This document shows, piece by piece, positions 219 through 63,727 of a stretch of DNA of 64,000 nt. Numbering within the stretch: the first letter of the stretch is position 1; each line of letters begins with the position of its first letter. The notes under the pieces were generated by a model. It saw only the letters and a list, made by a program, of their open reading frames with translations. It was not told the DNA's origin and did no database searches. A program made the position numbers and the translations under genes. Origin of the DNA: Octopus sinensis (taxonomy: Eukaryota); the NCBI RefSeq assembly GCF_006345805.1, contig NC_043023.1:9362001-9426000 (forward strand), given 5' to 3'.

Positions 219-290
219 GAATCTAGGGAATAACAAAATCTCGACTATTGAGCAAGGAACATTCAGGAATCTTTCCAACATAAAGTATTT
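219..290 (+). CDS. LRR exon, diverged type: (L)NLGNNKISTIEQGTFRNLSNIKY(L)
   Basis: ttacag|g...tt|gtaagt; 72 nt; phase 2/2; matches LxLxxNxIxxIxxxxFxxLxxL. Confidence 0.9.
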
Positions 291-1214
291 GTAAGTTGAA
301 TCTATTTTGCCGATACTCTTCACTTGACGGTATATTTCTAAATATTTGGTGTTTTCCTATCTTTTTTCTTCGTGAACTTGCCCTTCTCTAACTCAGATTT
401 TCTCCCTTTATGAGTCTGCAAATGTGCATGTGAAAGTGTTTAGAAATACGAAAATTTGGTGTTTACATCAGTGATTCGTATTGTGTGTGTGTATAAATTT
501 CTGTATGTGGTCATTTGGAGAGCATAAGTCCTCAGCCGTTTGAACTACTTCTCCCAACTATATTACCAAACAATATTAAATTAGCAGTGAAACTCGAAGC
601 AATCCAATGAAGCTACATATAATAAATCGCTTCAAATCAACGTATTAGCTACTGGAAAAGACTGAAAGAGTGAAAGATATGCAGTGATATAAATCTGGAA
701 ATTCATGGAAGGCCTTGTACCAAACCTTGGCATTGAAAGTTACACAAACAGCAGAACAGGGCGCCACATTTTGCAAGTTGGATCAGTCTTGCTGATATTA
801 TTTTCTTGACTGTATTTTTCTGCACATTTGATGTCTTCCCATGTTTCTTTCTGAACTTCAATTTGCCATTTTCTAACTCGCCTTCATTCAATATACGTGT
901 AATGCAACGGGTGTTTGAAAATGTATGTTAATATGAGTGTTTGGATTCTACATCACTTTGTGTATAATTGTGTGTATGTGCATCTGTATTTTTTTCGTCT
1001 GAAATAAGTGAATAATTATATACTCGTTTACCGTTTCCTCTTGGGTAAGATATGTCAAGCGAACCAGAAAGCATTGCTTTCTTCTTCTAAAGAAAATTTG
1101 TTCGCCTGAAAGTTCACGAGGTCTAAGCACGGCTTTCAGGAATGTTGATTGGAAGATGCTTTCAGAAGTTTATTTATATTGTATGTGCTGAAGAGATTGG
1201 TTTAACCACCCGCA

Positions 1215-1490
1215 AATAATAATAATAATAATAATAATAATAATAATAATAATATAATAATAATAATAATAATAATAATAAATAATAATAATAATAATAA
1301 TAATAATAATAATATAATAATAATAATATAATAATAATAATAATGATGATGATAATAATAATAATAATAATAATAATAATAATAATAATAATAATAATAA
1401 TAATAATGATGATGATAATAATAATAATAATAATAATAATAATAATAATAATAATAATAATAATAATAATAATAATAGTAATAATAATAT
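1215..1490. repeat. (AAT)n microsatellite
   Basis: Direct; source of the poly-I/L/Y pseudo-ORFs. Confidence 0.97.
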
Positions 1491-2137
1491 ACAGTACCAG
1501 GCAGTGGCTCTCATGGCTTCTGATCTTAACTGACTGGAAGTGTTATCATGTACATTGTTTTGTCTTGGTATAAAAGATGGGCTACAGCAAATATTCTGCT
1601 CAATACCACAGATTTGCTTGTCAGTTGTTTGACCATAACCAGTTGAGCATGTCCCTTAGTGGCTGACGATATGTGCATCTCTGATCACGCACAGAAGTAG
1701 TGGGGGAGCATCATAGCCATGTGTTGAAAGGAATTATTTGGGGTTTGGATAATTCACCTTTGGAAACATAGGTGGTTCGTTCAACATCCTTAAACAATCC
1801 TTATTCAGGGACCTTTTGAGCAGGATGGGTTACTCGACCAGAAGAAAATTCTAACTGGGCCTCACAGGCAAGGACATGCACTGTTTGTCTTGATATGAGA
1901 TCACAATGTCGCGCACATATGGTTGTGATGCATGTGTCTTGTGTATCTTGATCAGACGGGTAGTAATGATAGGTATTCTGGGCTTCGTATATTTTACCCC
2001 AGTGTCACTTTGATGGCATGCACTGCTCCCACACTCAATAATAATAATAATAATAATAATAATAATAATAGTAATTGTAATAATAATAATAATAATAATA
2101 ATAATAATAATAATAATAATAATAATAATAATAATAA
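1491..2137 (+). mobile_element. Interspersed repeat whose 3' end runs into an (AAT)n tail
   Basis: The tail ccccagtg.cactttgatggcatgcactgctc.cacact.aataataa recurs at ~26380-26470, again followed by (AAT)n. Confidence 0.5.
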
Positions 2138-2920
2138 TTTCACAACAAATTGCGGTTTTGAAACTTGGCTGATAGGTGGGAAAAAATCTCTGCATAGAAG
2201 ATATATGGCTCGTAGCAAACAAATTACTGTAGACCAGGAGGTCTGCTATGAGTATGTAGAGAACTCAGGTGTAAAGCGAAGACTTTCCCATGGCTGATAA
2301 GTTTAGAGATTATTGGCTGGTAACTCTCAACCCAATGTGAGGAAAAATGGTGTAGACCCAAAGAGCCGATGCCGTAAGGAGGGGATTGAAACAGTGGACC
2401 ACCTAATCACGGGGCGTAAGGTTTTAGAACCTGTAGAGGATAAATCAAGGCATGACAGAATTGGTCAATATCTACAATGGATATAATGTCGACATTTTAT
2501 AATCAAATCTGTCGATAAATGGTATAAACTCCTCATTCAAGCTGTAACTGATTGATGTTACAATTCTTTGGGACTTTCCAGTATGTACACACCGGACCAT
2601 CAAAACTAAAAGACCAAAACAGTAAAGTCTGTTTATTGATTGACGTGAGCCTTCTGTGTGATCATTATATCTCAGCAAAGGAATTCGATAAGCTCAGAAA
2701 ATATAACGATTTGCTAATGGAAATGGAAAAGAAGTGGCATATCAAGCCGGTTATAATACCACTGATTGCAGGATCACCTGGAATGGTCAAAAAAGAAACT
2801 CTAAATTATTTGAGAACCATCCCTGGCTGGCTTCTCTTTCATGCAGGAAGTGAAAAAGATCGTTTTAACTGCTACATCACACATACGGAAACGAGCATTG
2901 ACCCTTTGGATTTTCCTTGA
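2138..2920 (+). mobile_element. Degenerate 3' part of an REL-endonuclease non-LTR retrotransposon (R4/Dong-like)
   Basis: Zinc-knuckle remnant ETVDHLITG...SRHDRIGQYL and REL remnant CLLIDVS...KEFDKLRKYNDL...W...IIPLIAG; frameshifted. Confidence 0.8.
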
Positions 2921-4214
2921 TTTTACCAGTTTATTTTCTTTCTTTAATTATTTTACTTTTTTCTTATCTTCCTGTCTTTTGTGAGATTTGCATCGAAGTA
3001 TTGATTTTGTGAATTAGTACAAGATGGAAGTGAAGAGCATTTGAGGATGTCGAAGCTGCAAATGGGTGATGTATGTGATGAAGGAGCAGATCTTGGTAAT
3101 AATGTAACACCTCGTAAAGAACGCGAAACCGTTCACTCCTCCTACACTGACGCCCTCGTGTTGCGTCCCTCATGTGATTATCCATATTTTAAAACTTGTT
3201 ATTAAAACAATAAATATTCACAATAATTGTTTCAATTGAAAAACATACGAATGTATTAGACAGCTTGTGTTTAAAAGGTGTAAATATTTCAGAATATTCA
3301 AGGACACAGTATATGGAATAAGTAAGAAGGGGTGATCTTATACTTGGTAGTGGGACGATGAAAATTGCACGCTGAAAAAAATAAACCAAACAGCGTTTCA
3401 ACTCTGTGTGAAAATATGTGTGTGTATGTAAAAGGGGAGTGTGTGTGAATGTGTGTGTGTGTGTTTGTGATTGTGTGTGTGCGTGTGCTCTAGCATTTCT
3501 TATGCTCATGTTTACATTCTGGTGTTCTGATGAAATTTTTTTCTTGAGAACACACTGTTCGTGGTTAGGTTATTTGACGTCTATATCTAGCATATTAGGA
3601 GTCCACATTAGTGGTCATTCCTCTTAATTTGTATGTAATATATATATGTATAAAGATAGATAGATAGATAGATAGATAGATAAATAAATATATTGTATAT
3701 GTGTGTATGTATAGATAAATATATTGTATATGCATGATAACCATGAAAACAACGATTGCCAAAATCCGCTTAATGAGAAGATGATGATATGAGAAAAATA
3801 AAAATAATGATGAAAATAGTGGTGTTTGTGATGTGTGTAGTAGTTGAAGTTACGTGGATGGTAGGTGATACGCAATAAAGCACATGAGAGCGAGAACAAA
3901 TATTCCGCTGACCTTTCAATATTATATACGAAGCCACAAAAGAGAAGAAACGAAAAAAAGTGGGTGAAAGCCTATAGGGGTGGATGTGCCCGAAAGAGTA
4001 AAAGCAGAAATCTAGAATTTAGAATTTATAAGATTTGTTGATTAATTTGTCAATGTTATGAATTTCACCGTTCATTCACTTTTGTCTGTTTCATGTTGTA
4101 GCTATTTTTCTCTTCTATTTCTTTCTCTTCAATTTCTGCATCTTATTGTTTAGACATAATATTTATATTTTTATGACTAAATTCTACTATTTTATTTCTT
4201 CTGAATCCCTACAG

Positions 4215-61960: not shown

Positions 61961-62199
61961 TGCATTCAATTTTATTCTATCTCCTCATCTAATCAGCCAT
62001 TTTTAGGAAGAGGCAAATGAGTCGATGCCATAGTTCCTGATACTTTATTAGTACTTTGATGTATGGATGCCCATGAGGGATGAAATATAAAGTTGAACCC
62101 TGTCTTCCCTCCGAAGTCGATAAGTTAAGGTAACAATCGAGTAATGATATCGATAGTATAGACTAACATCGCTTTCTCTCTCTCGCTCTCTCTCTCTCT

Positions 62200-62400
62200 C
62201 AAACTTGCGCAGCTTGCCACGGAATCGTTAGCGCGCCGGACAAAAGGCTTAGCGGCATTTCGTCTGTCTTTACATTCTGTGCTCCAATTCCACCTCTCAA
62301 ATTTCGTGATCAATAACATAAGTACCAGCTTAGCACTTTGGTCAATGTAATCGACTAACCTATTCACCAAAATTTCAAATCTTGTGCCAATAAAATAAAG
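62200..62400 (+). mobile_element. Diverged family-3-related SINE
   Basis: gcttgccacggaatcgttagcgcgccgg...gcatttcgtctg...taagtaccag...gtcaatgtaatcgacta. Confidence 0.6.
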
Positions 62401-63342
62401 AATTATTATTATTATTATTATTATTATTATGATGATGATCATCGTCATCATCATCATTATTATTATTATTATTATTATTATTATTATTGTGACTATTATT
62501 ATTGTGATTATTGTGATTATTGTGATTATTATTATTATTATTATTATTATTATTATTATTATTATTATTATTATAATTATTATAATTATTATTACTATTA
62601 TTGTTATTATTATTGTGATTATTATTATTGTGATTATTATTATTATTATTATTATTATTGTGATTATTATTATTATTGTGATTATTATTGTGATTATTAT
62701 TATTGTGATTATTATTATTATTATTATTATTATTAATATTATTATTATTGTGATTATTATTGTGATTATTATTATTATTATTATTAATATTATTATTATT
62801 GTGATTATTATTATTATTATTATTATTATTAATATTATTATTATTGAGATTATTATTATTATTATTATTATTATTATTATTATTATTATTATTATTATTA
62901 TTATTATATTATTGTGATTATTATTGTGATTATTATTATTGTGATTATTATTATTATTATATATTATTATTATATTATTATTATTGTGATTATTATTATT
63001 ATTATTATTATTATTATTATTATTATTATTATTATTATTATTATTATTATTGTGATTATTATTATTTATTATTATTATTATTATTATTATTATTATTATT
63101 ATTATTATTATTATTATTGTGATTATTATTATTGTGATTATTATTATTATTATTATTATTATTATTATTATTATTATTATTGTGATTATTATTGTGATTA
63201 TTATTATTATTATTATTAATATTATTATTATTGTGATTATTATTATTATTATTATTATTATTATATTATTATTATTGAGATTATTATTATTATTATTATT
63301 ATTATTATTATTATTATTAGTAGTAGTAGTAGTAGTAGTAGT
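62401..63342. repeat. ~940-bp (ATT)n/(ATTGTG) microsatellite
   Basis: Direct; source of the 421-aa poly-I/N pseudo-ORF. Confidence 0.97.
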
Positions 63343-63582
63343 ACATAATGGTAATGTCGTGAATTGGTAAAAACATGAAACGAAATACACTTTTATATTG
63401 AATGACGTTTTTCTGAATTTTCTGTCGATTTTTCAGTAAAATCTGTTTTAATATTTATCCCCCTGGGTCACTAATATAAAATATCAATCAAGGCCTGGCA
63501 TCTGTACGCCACCTCTGCAAAATAATACATATTCAATGCTTTGTGTGTGTGTTACATATCATTAACTTTGTTGTTTTTGTAG

Positions 63583-63727
63583 GCAGTGGCTGCTCTGTTA
63601 CACTACTTCCTTCTGACATCTTTCATCTGGATGGCTGTAGAAGCACTTCATATTTTCCTGGGCGTCGTTGTTGTATTCAACATATATCAGTCATCTTTTA
63701 TTAAGAAGTGTTCAATTTTGGCCTGGG
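63583..63727 (+). CDS. TM3 to TM4 exon: AVAALLHYFLLTSFIWMAVEALHIFLGVVVVFNIYQSSFIKKCSILAW(G)
   Basis: ttgtag|gca...tggg|gtatgt; 145 nt; LLHYF.L....WM..E family-B/aGPCR motif. Confidence 0.94.

What the first reader, a model, noticed from the sequence alone, without database searches (positions are those of the whole stretch)
219..63727. Adhesion GPCR with an unusual LRR array + three-finger + SEA-like + HRM + GAIN ectodomain
Seen: 24 exons join in consistent phases into LRR(>=10)-cap-LU-SEA-like-HRM-GAIN/GPS-TM1-3. Established: vertebrate LRR-bearing aGPCRs (ADGRA2/3) use LRR-Ig-HRM-GAIN, and SEA occurs in ADGRF/ADGRG6. I know of no characterised aGPCR that combines an LRR array with a Ly6/uPAR domain and SEA. 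Inference: a lineage-specific receptor class with a rapidly remodelled recognition module on a conventional tethered-agonist signalling module.
Basis: partly seen in the sequence, partly recalled or inferred. Interest (0 to 1): 0.85.

Follow-up and report, generated by a model that had tools for sequence, protein, structure and literature searches.

The report
Octopus LRR–Ly6–SEA adhesion receptor gene

Summary
The window (+ strand, 219-63727) holds an adhesion GPCR gene that runs off both ends. Comparison with octopus relatives shows that chain is not the real structure. It reads the LRR C-terminal cap exon out of frame and leaves it by a weak cryptic donor. It omits two real exons (30356-30447, 37831-37883) and uses three wrong splice sites. 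The corrected structure has 26 exons: 10 LRR, cap, LU (2), SEA (3), HormR (2), GAIN/GPS (5), TM1-3 (3).

In this assembly the cap exon has three 1-bp homopolymer deletions that create a stop. The O. vulgaris orthologue is intact there, so assembly error is more likely than a pseudogene.

The domain calls hold. LU rests on a significant profile hit to LYPD1 plus an AF2/Foldseek three-finger fold. SEA rests on fold class plus near-threshold Pfam SEA hits in non-octopus relatives. HormR-GAIN aligns collinearly with ADGRG6.

The architecture is not octopus-specific: Haliotis and Nucella share it, a scallop fragment carries the LU-SEA part, and one assembled mRNA carries all of it. The octopus expansion with LRRs is published (Ritschard 2019, group 3). 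LU and SEA were not reported there. Six LRR exons are recent tandem duplicates.

The parts
219..290 (+). LRR exon 1 in the window (72 nt, NLGNNKISTIEQGTFRNLSNIKY). The gene's 5' end (signal peptide, LRRNT) lies upstream of the window.
   Evidence: AG/GT-bounded, stop-free, LRR motif; Pfam LRR_8 on the spliced product
4215..4286 (+). LRR exon 2, type A (RLYGNKISKIERGLFENLTRLIT). It lies in duplicated block 3654-5611.
   Evidence: block 95% identical to 12641-14581
5921..5992 (+). LRR exon 3, type B
8100..8171 (+). LRR exon 4, type B
13187..13258 (+). LRR exon 5, type A (second copy)
15083..15154 (+). LRR exon 6, type B
19079..19150 (+). LRR exon 7, type B
20392..20463 (+). LRR exon 8, type B
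21650..21721 (+). LRR exon 9, type B
25126..25194 (+). Last, divergent LRR exon (69 nt, KLSYNRLQKFDGAFSYISSISE). It leaves 2 nt for the next exon.
   Evidence: orthologous exon in O. vulgaris at L001 7379-7447
27524..27687 (+). LRR C-terminal cap (LRRCT-like) exon, 164 nt here and 167 nt in O. vulgaris. Three 1-bp deletions (before 27562, 27580 and 27646), each in a short homopolymer, shift the frame and give an in-frame TAA. Piecewise translation: IDLRNNTDMMCGC / LPAMS / YIKSTYNRTVRILGKCHTNLGS / DKLISIRKYSQCK.
   Evidence: The O. vulgaris exon is open and in phase. The LRRCT call rests on the motif only; Pfam gives no hit.
30356..30447 (+). LU (Ly6/uPAR) exon a: KTLLRKNLQCQTCSGMICDHSQMRSCPGLL.
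   Evidence: 100% identical to P0014 by tblastn; boundaries
30829..31012 (+). LU exon b: PLCQYGL...CVDCCSDNLCNKNDFPG
   Evidence: LU profile hit to LYPD1 at E 9.5e-6; Foldseek top 50 all three-finger folds
35285..35391 (+). SEA exon 1 (beta1 and start of alpha1); GTGAGT donor
37831..37883 (+). SEA exon 2 (VEHELLTLTGVFKVEYC).
   Evidence: 100% identical to P0014
39473..39630 (+). SEA exon 3 (SSEKSSVVFTIYCTVLIESTKDRV...KSKGE)
   Evidence: AF2 beta-alpha-beta-beta-alpha-beta model at pLDDT 80; Pfam SEA in relatives
44933..45044 (+). HormR (HRM) exon 1
   Evidence: Pfam HRM 25.7 bits; aligned to the ADGRG6 HormR
45786..45907 (+). HormR exon 2. The acceptor is 9 nt upstream of the alternative and gives the conserved Cys in ...ATRHC SSRKC....
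47505..47724 (+). GAIN subdomain A exon 1
48103..48274 (+). GAIN subdomain A exon 2
51084..51230 (+). GAIN subdomain B exon 1
   Evidence: P0007
55784..55918 (+). GAIN subdomain B exon 2
56548..56688 (+). GPS exon: CVYW...HW..GC...CSCNHL|TSFAILM (canonical HL/T site followed by the tethered-agonist core)
   Evidence: Pfam GPS 53-56 bits
58210..58331 (+). Stalk and TM1 exon
61045..61168 (+). TM2 exon
63583..63727 (+). TM3 exon. TM4-7 lie beyond the window.
   Evidence: P0014 and P0016 continue with TM4-7
3654..21729 (+). Tandemly duplicated genomic blocks that carry the LRR exons. Block A is about 2 kb in 2 copies (95% identical). Block B is about 1.1-1.3 kb in 6 copies (88-92% identical).

Best explanation
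The window holds 26 exons of one adhesion GPCR gene. It belongs to the octopus-expanded family that Ritschard et al. 2019 called group 3 and that NCBI annotates as 'ADGRG6-like'.

The encoded receptor has a distal binding module: a horseshoe of at least 10 LRRs, a four-Cys cap, and one Ly6/uPAR three-finger domain. This sits on a membrane-proximal SEA-HormR-GAIN stalk of the ADGRG6 (GPR126) type and a class-B2 seven-helix domain.

Inferred mechanism. The GAIN domain cleaves itself at CNHL|TSFAILM. The LRR-LU head binds an unknown extracellular or cell-surface partner. Binding or mechanical pull then exposes the TSFAILM tethered agonist to the 7TM core and starts G-protein signalling.

The architecture is old in molluscs: gastropods have it, a squid-like mRNA has it, and a bivalve fragment carries the LU-SEA part. 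Octopods multiplied the gene. At this locus the LRR array itself was lengthened recently by tandem duplication of single-LRR exon units. All of these exons are 72 nt and in the same phase, so any number of them stays in frame. The copies differ mainly at the ligand-facing x positions of LxxLxLxxNxI.

The three 1-bp deletions that break the cap exon in this assembly are most likely consensus errors beside an (AAT)n microsatellite.
For: Gene structure. Both blocks are open with consistent phases and AG/GT sites. Every downstream exon matches P0014 (O. vulgaris; 91% overall by blastp) and the paralogues.

Domains. LRR_8, GPS and 7tm_2 are significant in Pfam. HRM scores 25.7 bits. HormR through GPS aligns collinearly with zebrafish ADGRG6 6v55 at E 2.2e-26. 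For LU, the mollusc profile hits LYPD1 at E 9.5e-6 with the Cys residues aligned, and the AF2 model (pLDDT 70) gives only three-finger folds in the Foldseek top 50, best Lynx2 at TM 0.63/0.67. For SEA, the AF2 model (pLDDT 80) is beta-alpha-beta-beta-alpha-beta, Pfam SEA scores 23.7 bits on Haliotis residues 342-434, overlapping the region that matches the octopus LU+SEA profile (239-428), and SEA is the only Pfam family hit by more than one member (3 of 12) of the cross-mollusc alignment, best E 1.4e-6.

One gene. P0082 carries the whole architecture on an intron-free 4201-nt contig. Several single Octopus models have LRR + LU + SEA + HormR (P0037 lacks it) + GAIN + 7TM. The O. vulgaris cap exon is intact and in phase with the last LRR exon.

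Published family. P0076 clusters with A0A0L8FLR8, which is listed in group 3 of Table S3.

Duplication and diversification. See; variable columns are 18/72 in exons against 31/232 in introns, Fisher p = 0.027.

Error rather than decay. No frameshift or stop occurs in about 2 kb of downstream exons in either genome. All other exon indels are multiples of three. The chance that 3 random frameshifts all fall in the 164-nt exon is about 2e-4. The exon sits in a run of isolated 1-bp A/T deletions next to a microsatellite.
Against: As the sequence stands, the reading frame is broken between LRR and LU.

The O. vulgaris annotation splits the orthologous locus into an LRR-only gene and a receptor gene that starts inside the cap exon.

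dN/dS against O. vulgaris is 0.85 overall and about 1 in SEA, GAIN and TM1-3. That is also what relaxed constraint would give.

No transcript of this particular locus was available.

The octopus SEA segment alone has no significant sequence or specific structural match to SEA; Foldseek gives only generic ferredoxin-like folds.

The LRRCT call is by motif only.

The ligand, the G-protein coupling and the cleavage are all inferred, not shown.
Confidence: 0.75

Rival explanations
1. The locus is a recent pseudogene or a decoupled gene. The three deletions in the cap exon are real, so the LRR array is no longer translated together with the LU-to-7TM part. The remaining open exons simply have not yet decayed.
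For: Three frame-breaking deletions and a TAA are present in the sequence given. dN/dS against O. vulgaris is about 0.85-1. Large tandem families commonly contain pseudogenes. The O. sinensis model P0016 starts only at HormR exon 2.
Against: All three lesions lie within 85 nt of one exon, while 2.75 kb of other exons have none (P about 2e-4 if random). All three are homopolymer shortenings in a patch of similar 1-bp deletions beside (AAT)n. The net change is -3 nt. The orthologue is intact. LU shows 0 nonsynonymous and 2 synonymous changes.
Confidence: 0.17
2. There are two genuine genes: a secreted LRR-only protein encoded by 219-25194 (and upstream), and a separate LU-SEA-HormR-GAIN-7TM receptor with its own promoter near 27.5-30 kb. 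This is how O. vulgaris is annotated.
For: The O. vulgaris annotation has a 190-aa LRR-only model that ends before the 899-aa receptor model, on the same strand. Many database entries are LRR(+LU)-only proteins, such as 'chaoptin', 'decorin-like' and 'TLR5'.
Against: The receptor model starts at an internal Met in the middle of the cap exon. That exon is open upstream of the Met and in phase with the last LRR exon. The cap's first Cys pair would be cut from its second pair. Paralogues and the P0082 mRNA have everything in one product. Gastropod proteins are collinear over the full length.
Confidence: 0.06
3. The cap exon is spliced at the GTGTCA donor (27623|27624) directly to 30829, giving a novel Cys-rich 'cap' fused to a half LU domain.
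For: The chain is open and phase-consistent.
Against: The 'cap' residues HCQLCQIYKEYIQQNCENSGQ are an out-of-frame reading; the same bases in the other frame are 100% identical to P0014. The chain drops two exons that are 100% conserved with O. vulgaris. It removes the LxCxxC start and three to four cysteines of the invariant LU framework. It also uses weaker splice sites.
Confidence: 0.02

Closest known systems
ADGRG6 / GPR126 (vertebrate adhesion GPCR; zebrafish ectodomain structure 6v55)
   Same: It has the same membrane-proximal order SEA - HormR - GAIN/GPS - 7TM. It is the best PDB sequence match for the ectodomain (E 2.2e-26, collinear from HormR to the HL|T site) and among the best for GAIN plus 7TM. 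The HL|T site and T-x-F-x-x-L-M tethered-agonist core are canonical. NCBI names the octopus genes 'ADGRG6-like'.
   Different: The distal CUB and pentraxin domains are absent. An LRRNT-LRR-cap array plus one Ly6/uPAR domain takes their place. Identity is low, so orthology is not established. The SEA is highly divergent in octopus.
Octopus-specific adhesion GPCR expansion, 'group 3' of Ritschard et al. 2019 (PMC6408891)
   Same: It is the same family. P0076's cluster contains A0A0L8FLR8, which is listed in their Table S3. The published features are GPS + 7TM, LRRs in some members, one member with a Death domain, genomic co-localisation, positive selection, and expression in axial nerve cord, suckers and skin.
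   Different: The paper reports only LRR, GPS, 7TM and Death. Its InterProScan table has no LU, SEA or HormR entry. It calls the group octopus-specific (with one Euprymna sequence), whereas the architecture also exists in Haliotis and Nucella, and a scallop fragment carries the LU-SEA part.
ADGRA2/ADGRA3 (GPR124/GPR125), the vertebrate LRR-bearing adhesion GPCRs
   Same: They also have N-terminal LRRs with a cap, followed further down by HormR and GAIN. One O. bimaculoides member (P0109) is even named 'ADGRA3' by NCBI, and Pfam's GAIN_ADGRA3 model hits several members.
   Different: Here LU + SEA occupy that place and no Ig was found. The best 7TM and GAIN sequence matches are to G-type receptors.
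Ly6/uPAR (LU) proteins such as LYPD1/Lynx2, LYPD6, CD59
   Same: The Cys framework is the same, including the C-terminal CC-x4-CN. There is a significant profile match to LYPD1, which is also the best structural match.
   Different: Here the LU domain is an internal module of a large multidomain receptor, not a small GPI-anchored or secreted protein. It has 11-12 cysteines. Pfam's LU models do not reach threshold.

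Membership tests
Adhesion GPCR (class B2) | GAIN domain ending in a GPS motif (4 Cys, 2 Trp, HL|T/S) | tested here: met
   Pfam GPS scores 53-56 bits against a cutoff of 22.5. The motif CVYW..HW..GC..CSCNHLTSFAILM is read directly. GAIN aligns with ADGRG6, ADGRG1/3, ADGRL1/3 and BAI3. Pfam's generic GAIN model is not significant.
Adhesion GPCR (class B2) | Secretin-like seven-helix domain directly after the GPS | tested here: met
   7tm_2 scores 58 bits on TM1-3. TM4-7 lie outside the window but are present in orthologue P0014.
Adhesion GPCR (class B2) | Autoproteolysis and tethered-agonist activation | not testable with these tools
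   Only the consensus residues are seen (HL|T and TSFAILM).
ADGRG6 / GPR126 orthologue | CUB and pentraxin domains at the N-terminus | tested here: not met
   No CUB or PTX hit in the window product or in full-length relatives; LRR + LU are found instead.
ADGRG6 / GPR126 orthologue | SEA - HormR - GAIN - 7TM core in that order | tested here: met
ADGRA2/3 | Ig domain between LRR/LRRCT and HormR | tested here: not met
   No Ig family hit. The interval is filled by LU + SEA.
Ly6/uPAR (LU) domain | Conserved disulfide framework with LxCxxC start and CC-x4-CN end | tested here: met
   11 invariant and 1 nearly invariant Cys from gastropods to octopus.
Ly6/uPAR (LU) domain | Three-finger fold | tested here: met
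   AF2 gives pLDDT 70 and pTM 0.59, but only the best of five models is confident. The Foldseek top 50 are all three-finger, uPAR or TGF-beta-receptor ectodomains; the best is Lynx2 at TM 0.63/0.67, E 6.6e-3.
Ly6/uPAR (LU) domain | Significant sequence similarity to known LU proteins | tested here: met
   The profile hits LYPD1 at E 9.5e-6, 29 bits. Pfam LU-type models reach only E 0.02-0.6 on single sequences.
SEA domain | Beta-alpha-beta-beta-alpha-beta sandwich of about 110 residues | tested here: met
   AF2 gives pLDDT 80 and pTM 0.71, and all five models agree. Foldseek returns only generic ferredoxin-like folds, with no SEA in the top 50.
SEA domain | Match to the Pfam SEA model at its curated threshold | tested here: inconclusive
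   Octopus segments give no hit. Haliotis scores 23.7 bits against a cutoff of 26.4. 3 of 12 cross-mollusc members hit SEA, best E 1.4e-6. Weak PDB profile hits to 1ivz and an ADGRF1 fragment have E 0.3-0.7.
SEA domain | G|SVVV-type autoproteolysis motif between beta2 and beta3 | tested here: not met
   No conserved G-S-[VI]-V-V in the family alignment. Many SEA domains lack it, so this does not exclude SEA.
Hormone receptor (HormR/HRM) domain | Pfam HRM and the conserved Cys and W-P pattern | tested here: inconclusive
   25.7 bits against a cutoff of 26.2 with the corrected acceptor. It aligns to the HormR of ADGRG6, latrophilin-1 and BAI3.
LRRCT cap | Four-Cys C-x-C...C...C cap after the last LRR | tested here: inconclusive
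   The motif is present in all relatives, and in canonical N-P-x-x-C-x-C form in P0082 and Haliotis. Pfam gives no hit. In the window the exon is frame-shifted.
Ritschard 2019 'group 3' octopus adhesion GPCRs | Homology to listed group-3 members | tested here: met
   P0076 (LU+SEA profile E 2e-76; 50% identical to the window product) is in the same cluster as A0A0L8FLR8, the Death-domain member of group 3.

The most novel reading that the evidence does not exclude
Octopods may use this family as a fast-evolving LRR-based recognition repertoire wired to G-protein signalling. Single-LRR exons, all 72 nt and in one phase, are amplified in tandem and diversify at ligand-contact positions. Because any subset stays in frame, they could also be included combinatorially by splicing. 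That would give suckers, skin and arm nerve cord many receptor specificities for contact cues, microbes or self/non-self. It would be a G-protein-coupled counterpart of TLR or VLR-type LRR diversification.
Probability: 0.15. Interest if true: 0.7.

Novelty: new variant of a known kind. Interest (0 to 1): 0.38.

Why it matters
The family is already known as one of the two octopus-specific class-B GPCR expansions, expressed in suckers, skin and the arm nerve cord.

This analysis adds a full domain map. The receptor has an ADGRG6-type SEA-HormR-GAIN-7TM core whose CUB-pentraxin head is replaced by LRRs plus a Ly6/uPAR domain. As far as I could find, no described adhesion GPCR has an LU domain.

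It also shows that the type is molluscan rather than octopus-only. The LRR array at this locus is still being remodelled by exon duplication.

On the practical side, public gene models for this family are often split or truncated (O. vulgaris: two genes; O. sinensis: a 382-kb chimera). Repertoire counts and selection analyses based on them need re-annotation.

None of this overturns how adhesion GPCRs are thought to work.

Tried and rejected
1. The 24-exon chain was rejected as the true structure after comparison with the homologues.

2. Pfam gave nothing for the LU and SEA segments of the window. A single-sequence PDB search gave only a non-significant activin-receptor hit. Profiles built across molluscs were needed.

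3. Foldseek of the SEA model returned only generic ferredoxin-like folds, so structure alone does not identify SEA.

I used the P0014 orthologue segments instead, which are 94% identical over LU+SEA.

5. The O. sinensis locus of P0016 could not be fetched because the gene range is 382 kb.

6. The last homologue search, with P0082, did not reveal its species. By analogy with the single Euprymna member in Ritschard's table it may be a decapodiform, but this is not shown.

7. Pfam does not recognise the cap as LRRCT.

8. Rfam found no RNA family in the window.

9. The exon-versus-intron divergence test is only marginal (p = 0.027 for six copies, 0.054 for five).

10. dN/dS cannot separate relaxed from diversifying selection with about 70 substitutions.

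Full report
WHAT THE WINDOW IS. The window is AT-rich (about 34% GC), repeat-laden animal DNA. Its closest protein matches are Octopus proteins. It is collinear at about 95-97% nucleotide identity with a stretch of O. vulgaris chromosome OX597842.1, fetched as L001. It therefore comes from a species or assembly very close to O. vulgaris and O. sinensis.

CHECKING THE OBSERVATION. At the 3' end the exons for the GPS motif, TM1, TM2 and TM3 are unambiguous and join in consistent phases. A scan for AG...GT-bounded, stop-free, LRR-like exons finds nine exons of exactly 72 nt, all in the same intron phase, at 219, 4215, 5921, 8100, 13187, 15083, 19079, 20392 and 21650. A divergent tenth exon of 69 nt lies at 25126. 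Pfam finds LRR_8, GPS and 7tm_2 in it, but not LU, SEA or HRM.

WHY THAT MODEL IS NOT THE GENE. A search with the non-LRR ectodomain returned 57 Octopus proteins, mostly named 'adhesion GPCR G6-like'. The best are P0014 (O. vulgaris; 83% in the search table, 91% to the corrected downstream product) and P0016 (O. sinensis). Several paralogues (P0017, P0020, P0026, P0037) show the full family layout. After the last LRR comes a four-Cys cap (...DMMCGCHLPAFVNYIK...GKC...YSQC). Next is an LU domain that begins LQCQTCSG. Then follow a longer SEA-like region, HormR (missing from the P0037 model), GAIN and 7TM.

Mapping these proteins onto the window by tblastn and reading the junctions gives five corrections:
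- Exon 30356-30447 (LU first half, 100% identical to P0014) is real and was skipped.
- Exon 37831-37883 (VEHELLTLTGVFKVEYC, 100% identical) was skipped.
- The first SEA exon ends at the strong GTGAGT donor at 35391.
- The third SEA exon starts at 39473, not 39514.
- HormR exon 2 starts at 45786, which restores a conserved Cys and lifts Pfam HRM to 25.7 bits against a cutoff of 26.2.

With these corrections the 15 exons from LU to TM3 give a 678-aa open product with better splice sites.

THE BROKEN EXON. The cap exon (27524-27687) matches the family only if the frame is changed three times. Direct alignment with O. vulgaris shows that exon to be 167 nt there, fully open and in phase with the last LRR exon. 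It reads DLRNNADMMCGCQLPAMSNYIKSTYNRTVRILGKCHTNLGSKDKLIPIMEYSQCK. The window lacks one base at each of three short homopolymers (AA to A at 27562, TT to T at 27580, AAA to AA at 27646), which yields an in-frame TAA.

Several results point to a real lesion being less likely than a consensus error:
- The three lesions lie within 85 nt, in a run of isolated 1-bp A/T deletions beside an (AAT)n microsatellite.
- The other 2.75 kb of exons have no frameshift or stop in either genome, and their indels are all multiples of three.
- If three frameshifts fell at random on the exons, the chance that all hit this exon is about 2e-4.

I therefore favour a local consensus error, at about 0.6-0.7 of my belief. 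A real, recent lesion is not excluded.

DOMAIN CLAIMS.
- LU. Across octopus, Argonauta, an unnamed mRNA, Haliotis, Nucella and a scallop, 11 Cys are invariant and a twelfth nearly so, with the LxCxxC start and the CC-x4-CN end. The profile hits human LYPD1/Lynx2 at E 9.5e-6, followed by LYPD6, SLURP-1, activin receptor and CD59. An AF2 model of the P0014 segment (pLDDT 70, pTM 0.59) gives only three-finger folds among the top 50 Foldseek PDB hits; the best is again Lynx2. LU is supported.
- SEA. The AF2 model (pLDDT 80, five concordant models) has beta-alpha-beta-beta-alpha-beta topology, but Foldseek returns only generic ferredoxin-like folds. The specific link comes through relatives. The octopus LU+SEA profile matches Haliotis P0098 at 239-428, and Pfam SEA hits P0098 at 342-434 with 23.7 bits against a cutoff of 26.4. 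SEA is the only Pfam family hit by more than one member (3 of 12) of a cross-mollusc alignment, best E 1.4e-6. No G|SVVV cleavage motif is conserved. I call it a divergent, probably non-cleaving SEA.
- HormR and GAIN. The corrected ectodomain aligns collinearly with zebrafish ADGRG6 (6v55) from the HormR W-P motif to CNHLT.F.ILM at E 2.2e-26.
- Cap. LRRCT is called by motif only.

ONE GENE OR TWO. The O. vulgaris annotation splits the orthologous locus into a 190-aa LRR-only gene and the 899-aa P0014, which starts at a Met inside the cap exon. However, that exon is open upstream of the Met and in phase with the LRR exons. Single models with the whole layout exist for paralogues. P0082 is a complete 1155-aa ORF (nt 452-3919) on an intron-free 4201-nt contig assembled from run SRR21372857, which is an mRNA. 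It carries signal peptide, LRRNT, LRRs, cap, LU, SEA, HormR, GAIN/GPS and 7TM. This is transcript-level evidence for a family member, not for this locus.

DISTRIBUTION AND PRIOR KNOWLEDGE. A profile of LU+SEA found only 42 proteins among 1.84 billion representatives. They come from Octopus species, Argonauta, two unnamed transcript contigs, Haliotis, Nucella and Mizuhopecten, plus a sea-cucumber LU protein. P0082 and the gastropod proteins align with the octopus proteins over about 1000-1170 residues. The architecture is therefore molluscan, and octopods expanded it.

Ritschard et al. 2019 (PMC6408891) described this expansion as 'group 3'. They reported GPS + 7TM, LRR in 5 of 22 sequences, one Death domain, co-localised genes, positive selection, and expression in axial nerve cord, suckers and skin. 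Their Table S3 lists A0A0L8FLR8, which is in the same cluster as P0076. It has no SEA, Ly-6/uPAR or hormone-receptor entry. Searches for an LU domain in adhesion GPCRs found no description. The held library is limited to open-licence papers and bioRxiv.

LRR ARRAY DYNAMICS. Six type-B LRR exons sit in units of 1.1-1.3 kb that are 88-92% identical. Two type-A exons sit in 2-kb blocks that are 95% identical. Among the B copies, 18 of 72 exon columns vary against 31 of 232 flanking-intron columns (p = 0.027). Nine codons carry amino-acid changes, mostly at the x positions of LxxLxLxxNxI. The O. vulgaris locus lacks the exon-bearing part of the unit nearest the last LRR, so copy number appears to differ between close relatives. 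Paralogues also differ by doubled LU or tripled SEA-HormR units.

Against O. vulgaris, dN/dS is 0.85 overall. LU has 0 nonsynonymous changes in 93 codons. SEA, GAIN and TM1-3 have ratios near 1. The counts are small, and the result cannot separate relaxed from diversifying selection.

MECHANISM (inferred). The GPS has all consensus residues and an HL|T site followed by TSFAILM. The expected mode of action is therefore the standard one for adhesion GPCRs. The GAIN domain cleaves itself, the two fragments stay non-covalently associated, and the tethered agonist is exposed after the LRR-LU head engages a partner. The partner, the coupling and the physiological role are unknown. The published expression pattern makes contact sensing or cell recognition in arms and skin a reasonable guess.

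VERDICT. The feature is real and the domain reading is essentially right. The exon model is partly wrong, and the locus is interrupted in this assembly. The family and its LRRs are already published, and the class is not lineage-specific to cephalopods. The LU + SEA content on an ADGRG6-type core appears to be undescribed, which makes this a new variant of a known kind of moderate interest.

Noticed in passing
window 22791-23975 (+) and 52433-53240 (-): The introns contain transposon debris: a reverse-transcriptase fragment (Pfam RVT_1, E 9e-10) and a DDE_3 transposase remnant (E 4e-5).
   Followed up: partly
window 27960-28361, 42403-42794, 45263-45698, 53938-54351: An interspersed repeat of about 400 bp occurs four times in the window. 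Each copy matches five or six places in the O. vulgaris locus L001 at 82-93% identity. It looks SINE-like and was not classified.
   Followed up: no
window 1200-1650, 26500-27500, 62350-63400: Long (AAT)n/(ATT)n microsatellites. The one at 26.5-27.5 kb abuts the frame-shifted cap exon and coincides with a cluster of 1-bp deletions relative to O. vulgaris.
   Followed up: partly
L001 4783-5617 versus window 18242-19990: O. vulgaris has the flanks of a type-B LRR unit joined at 5093|5096, without the exon-bearing segment present in the window (18548-19465). LRR exon number or arrangement therefore seems to differ between these close relatives or assemblies. Only 10 kb upstream was available.
   Followed up: partly
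P0016 (O. sinensis model) versus window 45786-63727: The NCBI model spans 382 kb. Against the window it is 100% identical in the TM1 and TM2 exons and 98% in TM3, but carries a different GPS exon (66% identical). It looks like a chimera across neighbouring paralogues.
   Followed up: no
P0049 (O. bimaculoides model): This model joins an LRR exon directly to the third SEA exon. The skip of cap, LU and SEA exons 1-2 is phase-compatible. It is either an alternative isoform or an annotation workaround.
   Followed up: no
family members P0052, P0015, P0053, P0076: Paralogues exist with two LU domains, with two or three SEA-HormR units in tandem, and with a C-terminal Death domain.
   Followed up: partly
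window exons 30356-31012 versus L001: The LU domain has no amino-acid difference from O. vulgaris (2 synonymous changes in 93 codons), while SEA, GAIN and TM1-3 change at dN/dS near 1.
   Followed up: partly
L002 (contig SRR21372857_4053) and P0116: Two full-length transcripts (1155 and 1161 aa, 73% identical to each other) come from unnamed species. They are about 36% identical to octopus members and 33% to gastropod members, and may be decapodiform cephalopods. The species was not identified.
   Followed up: partly
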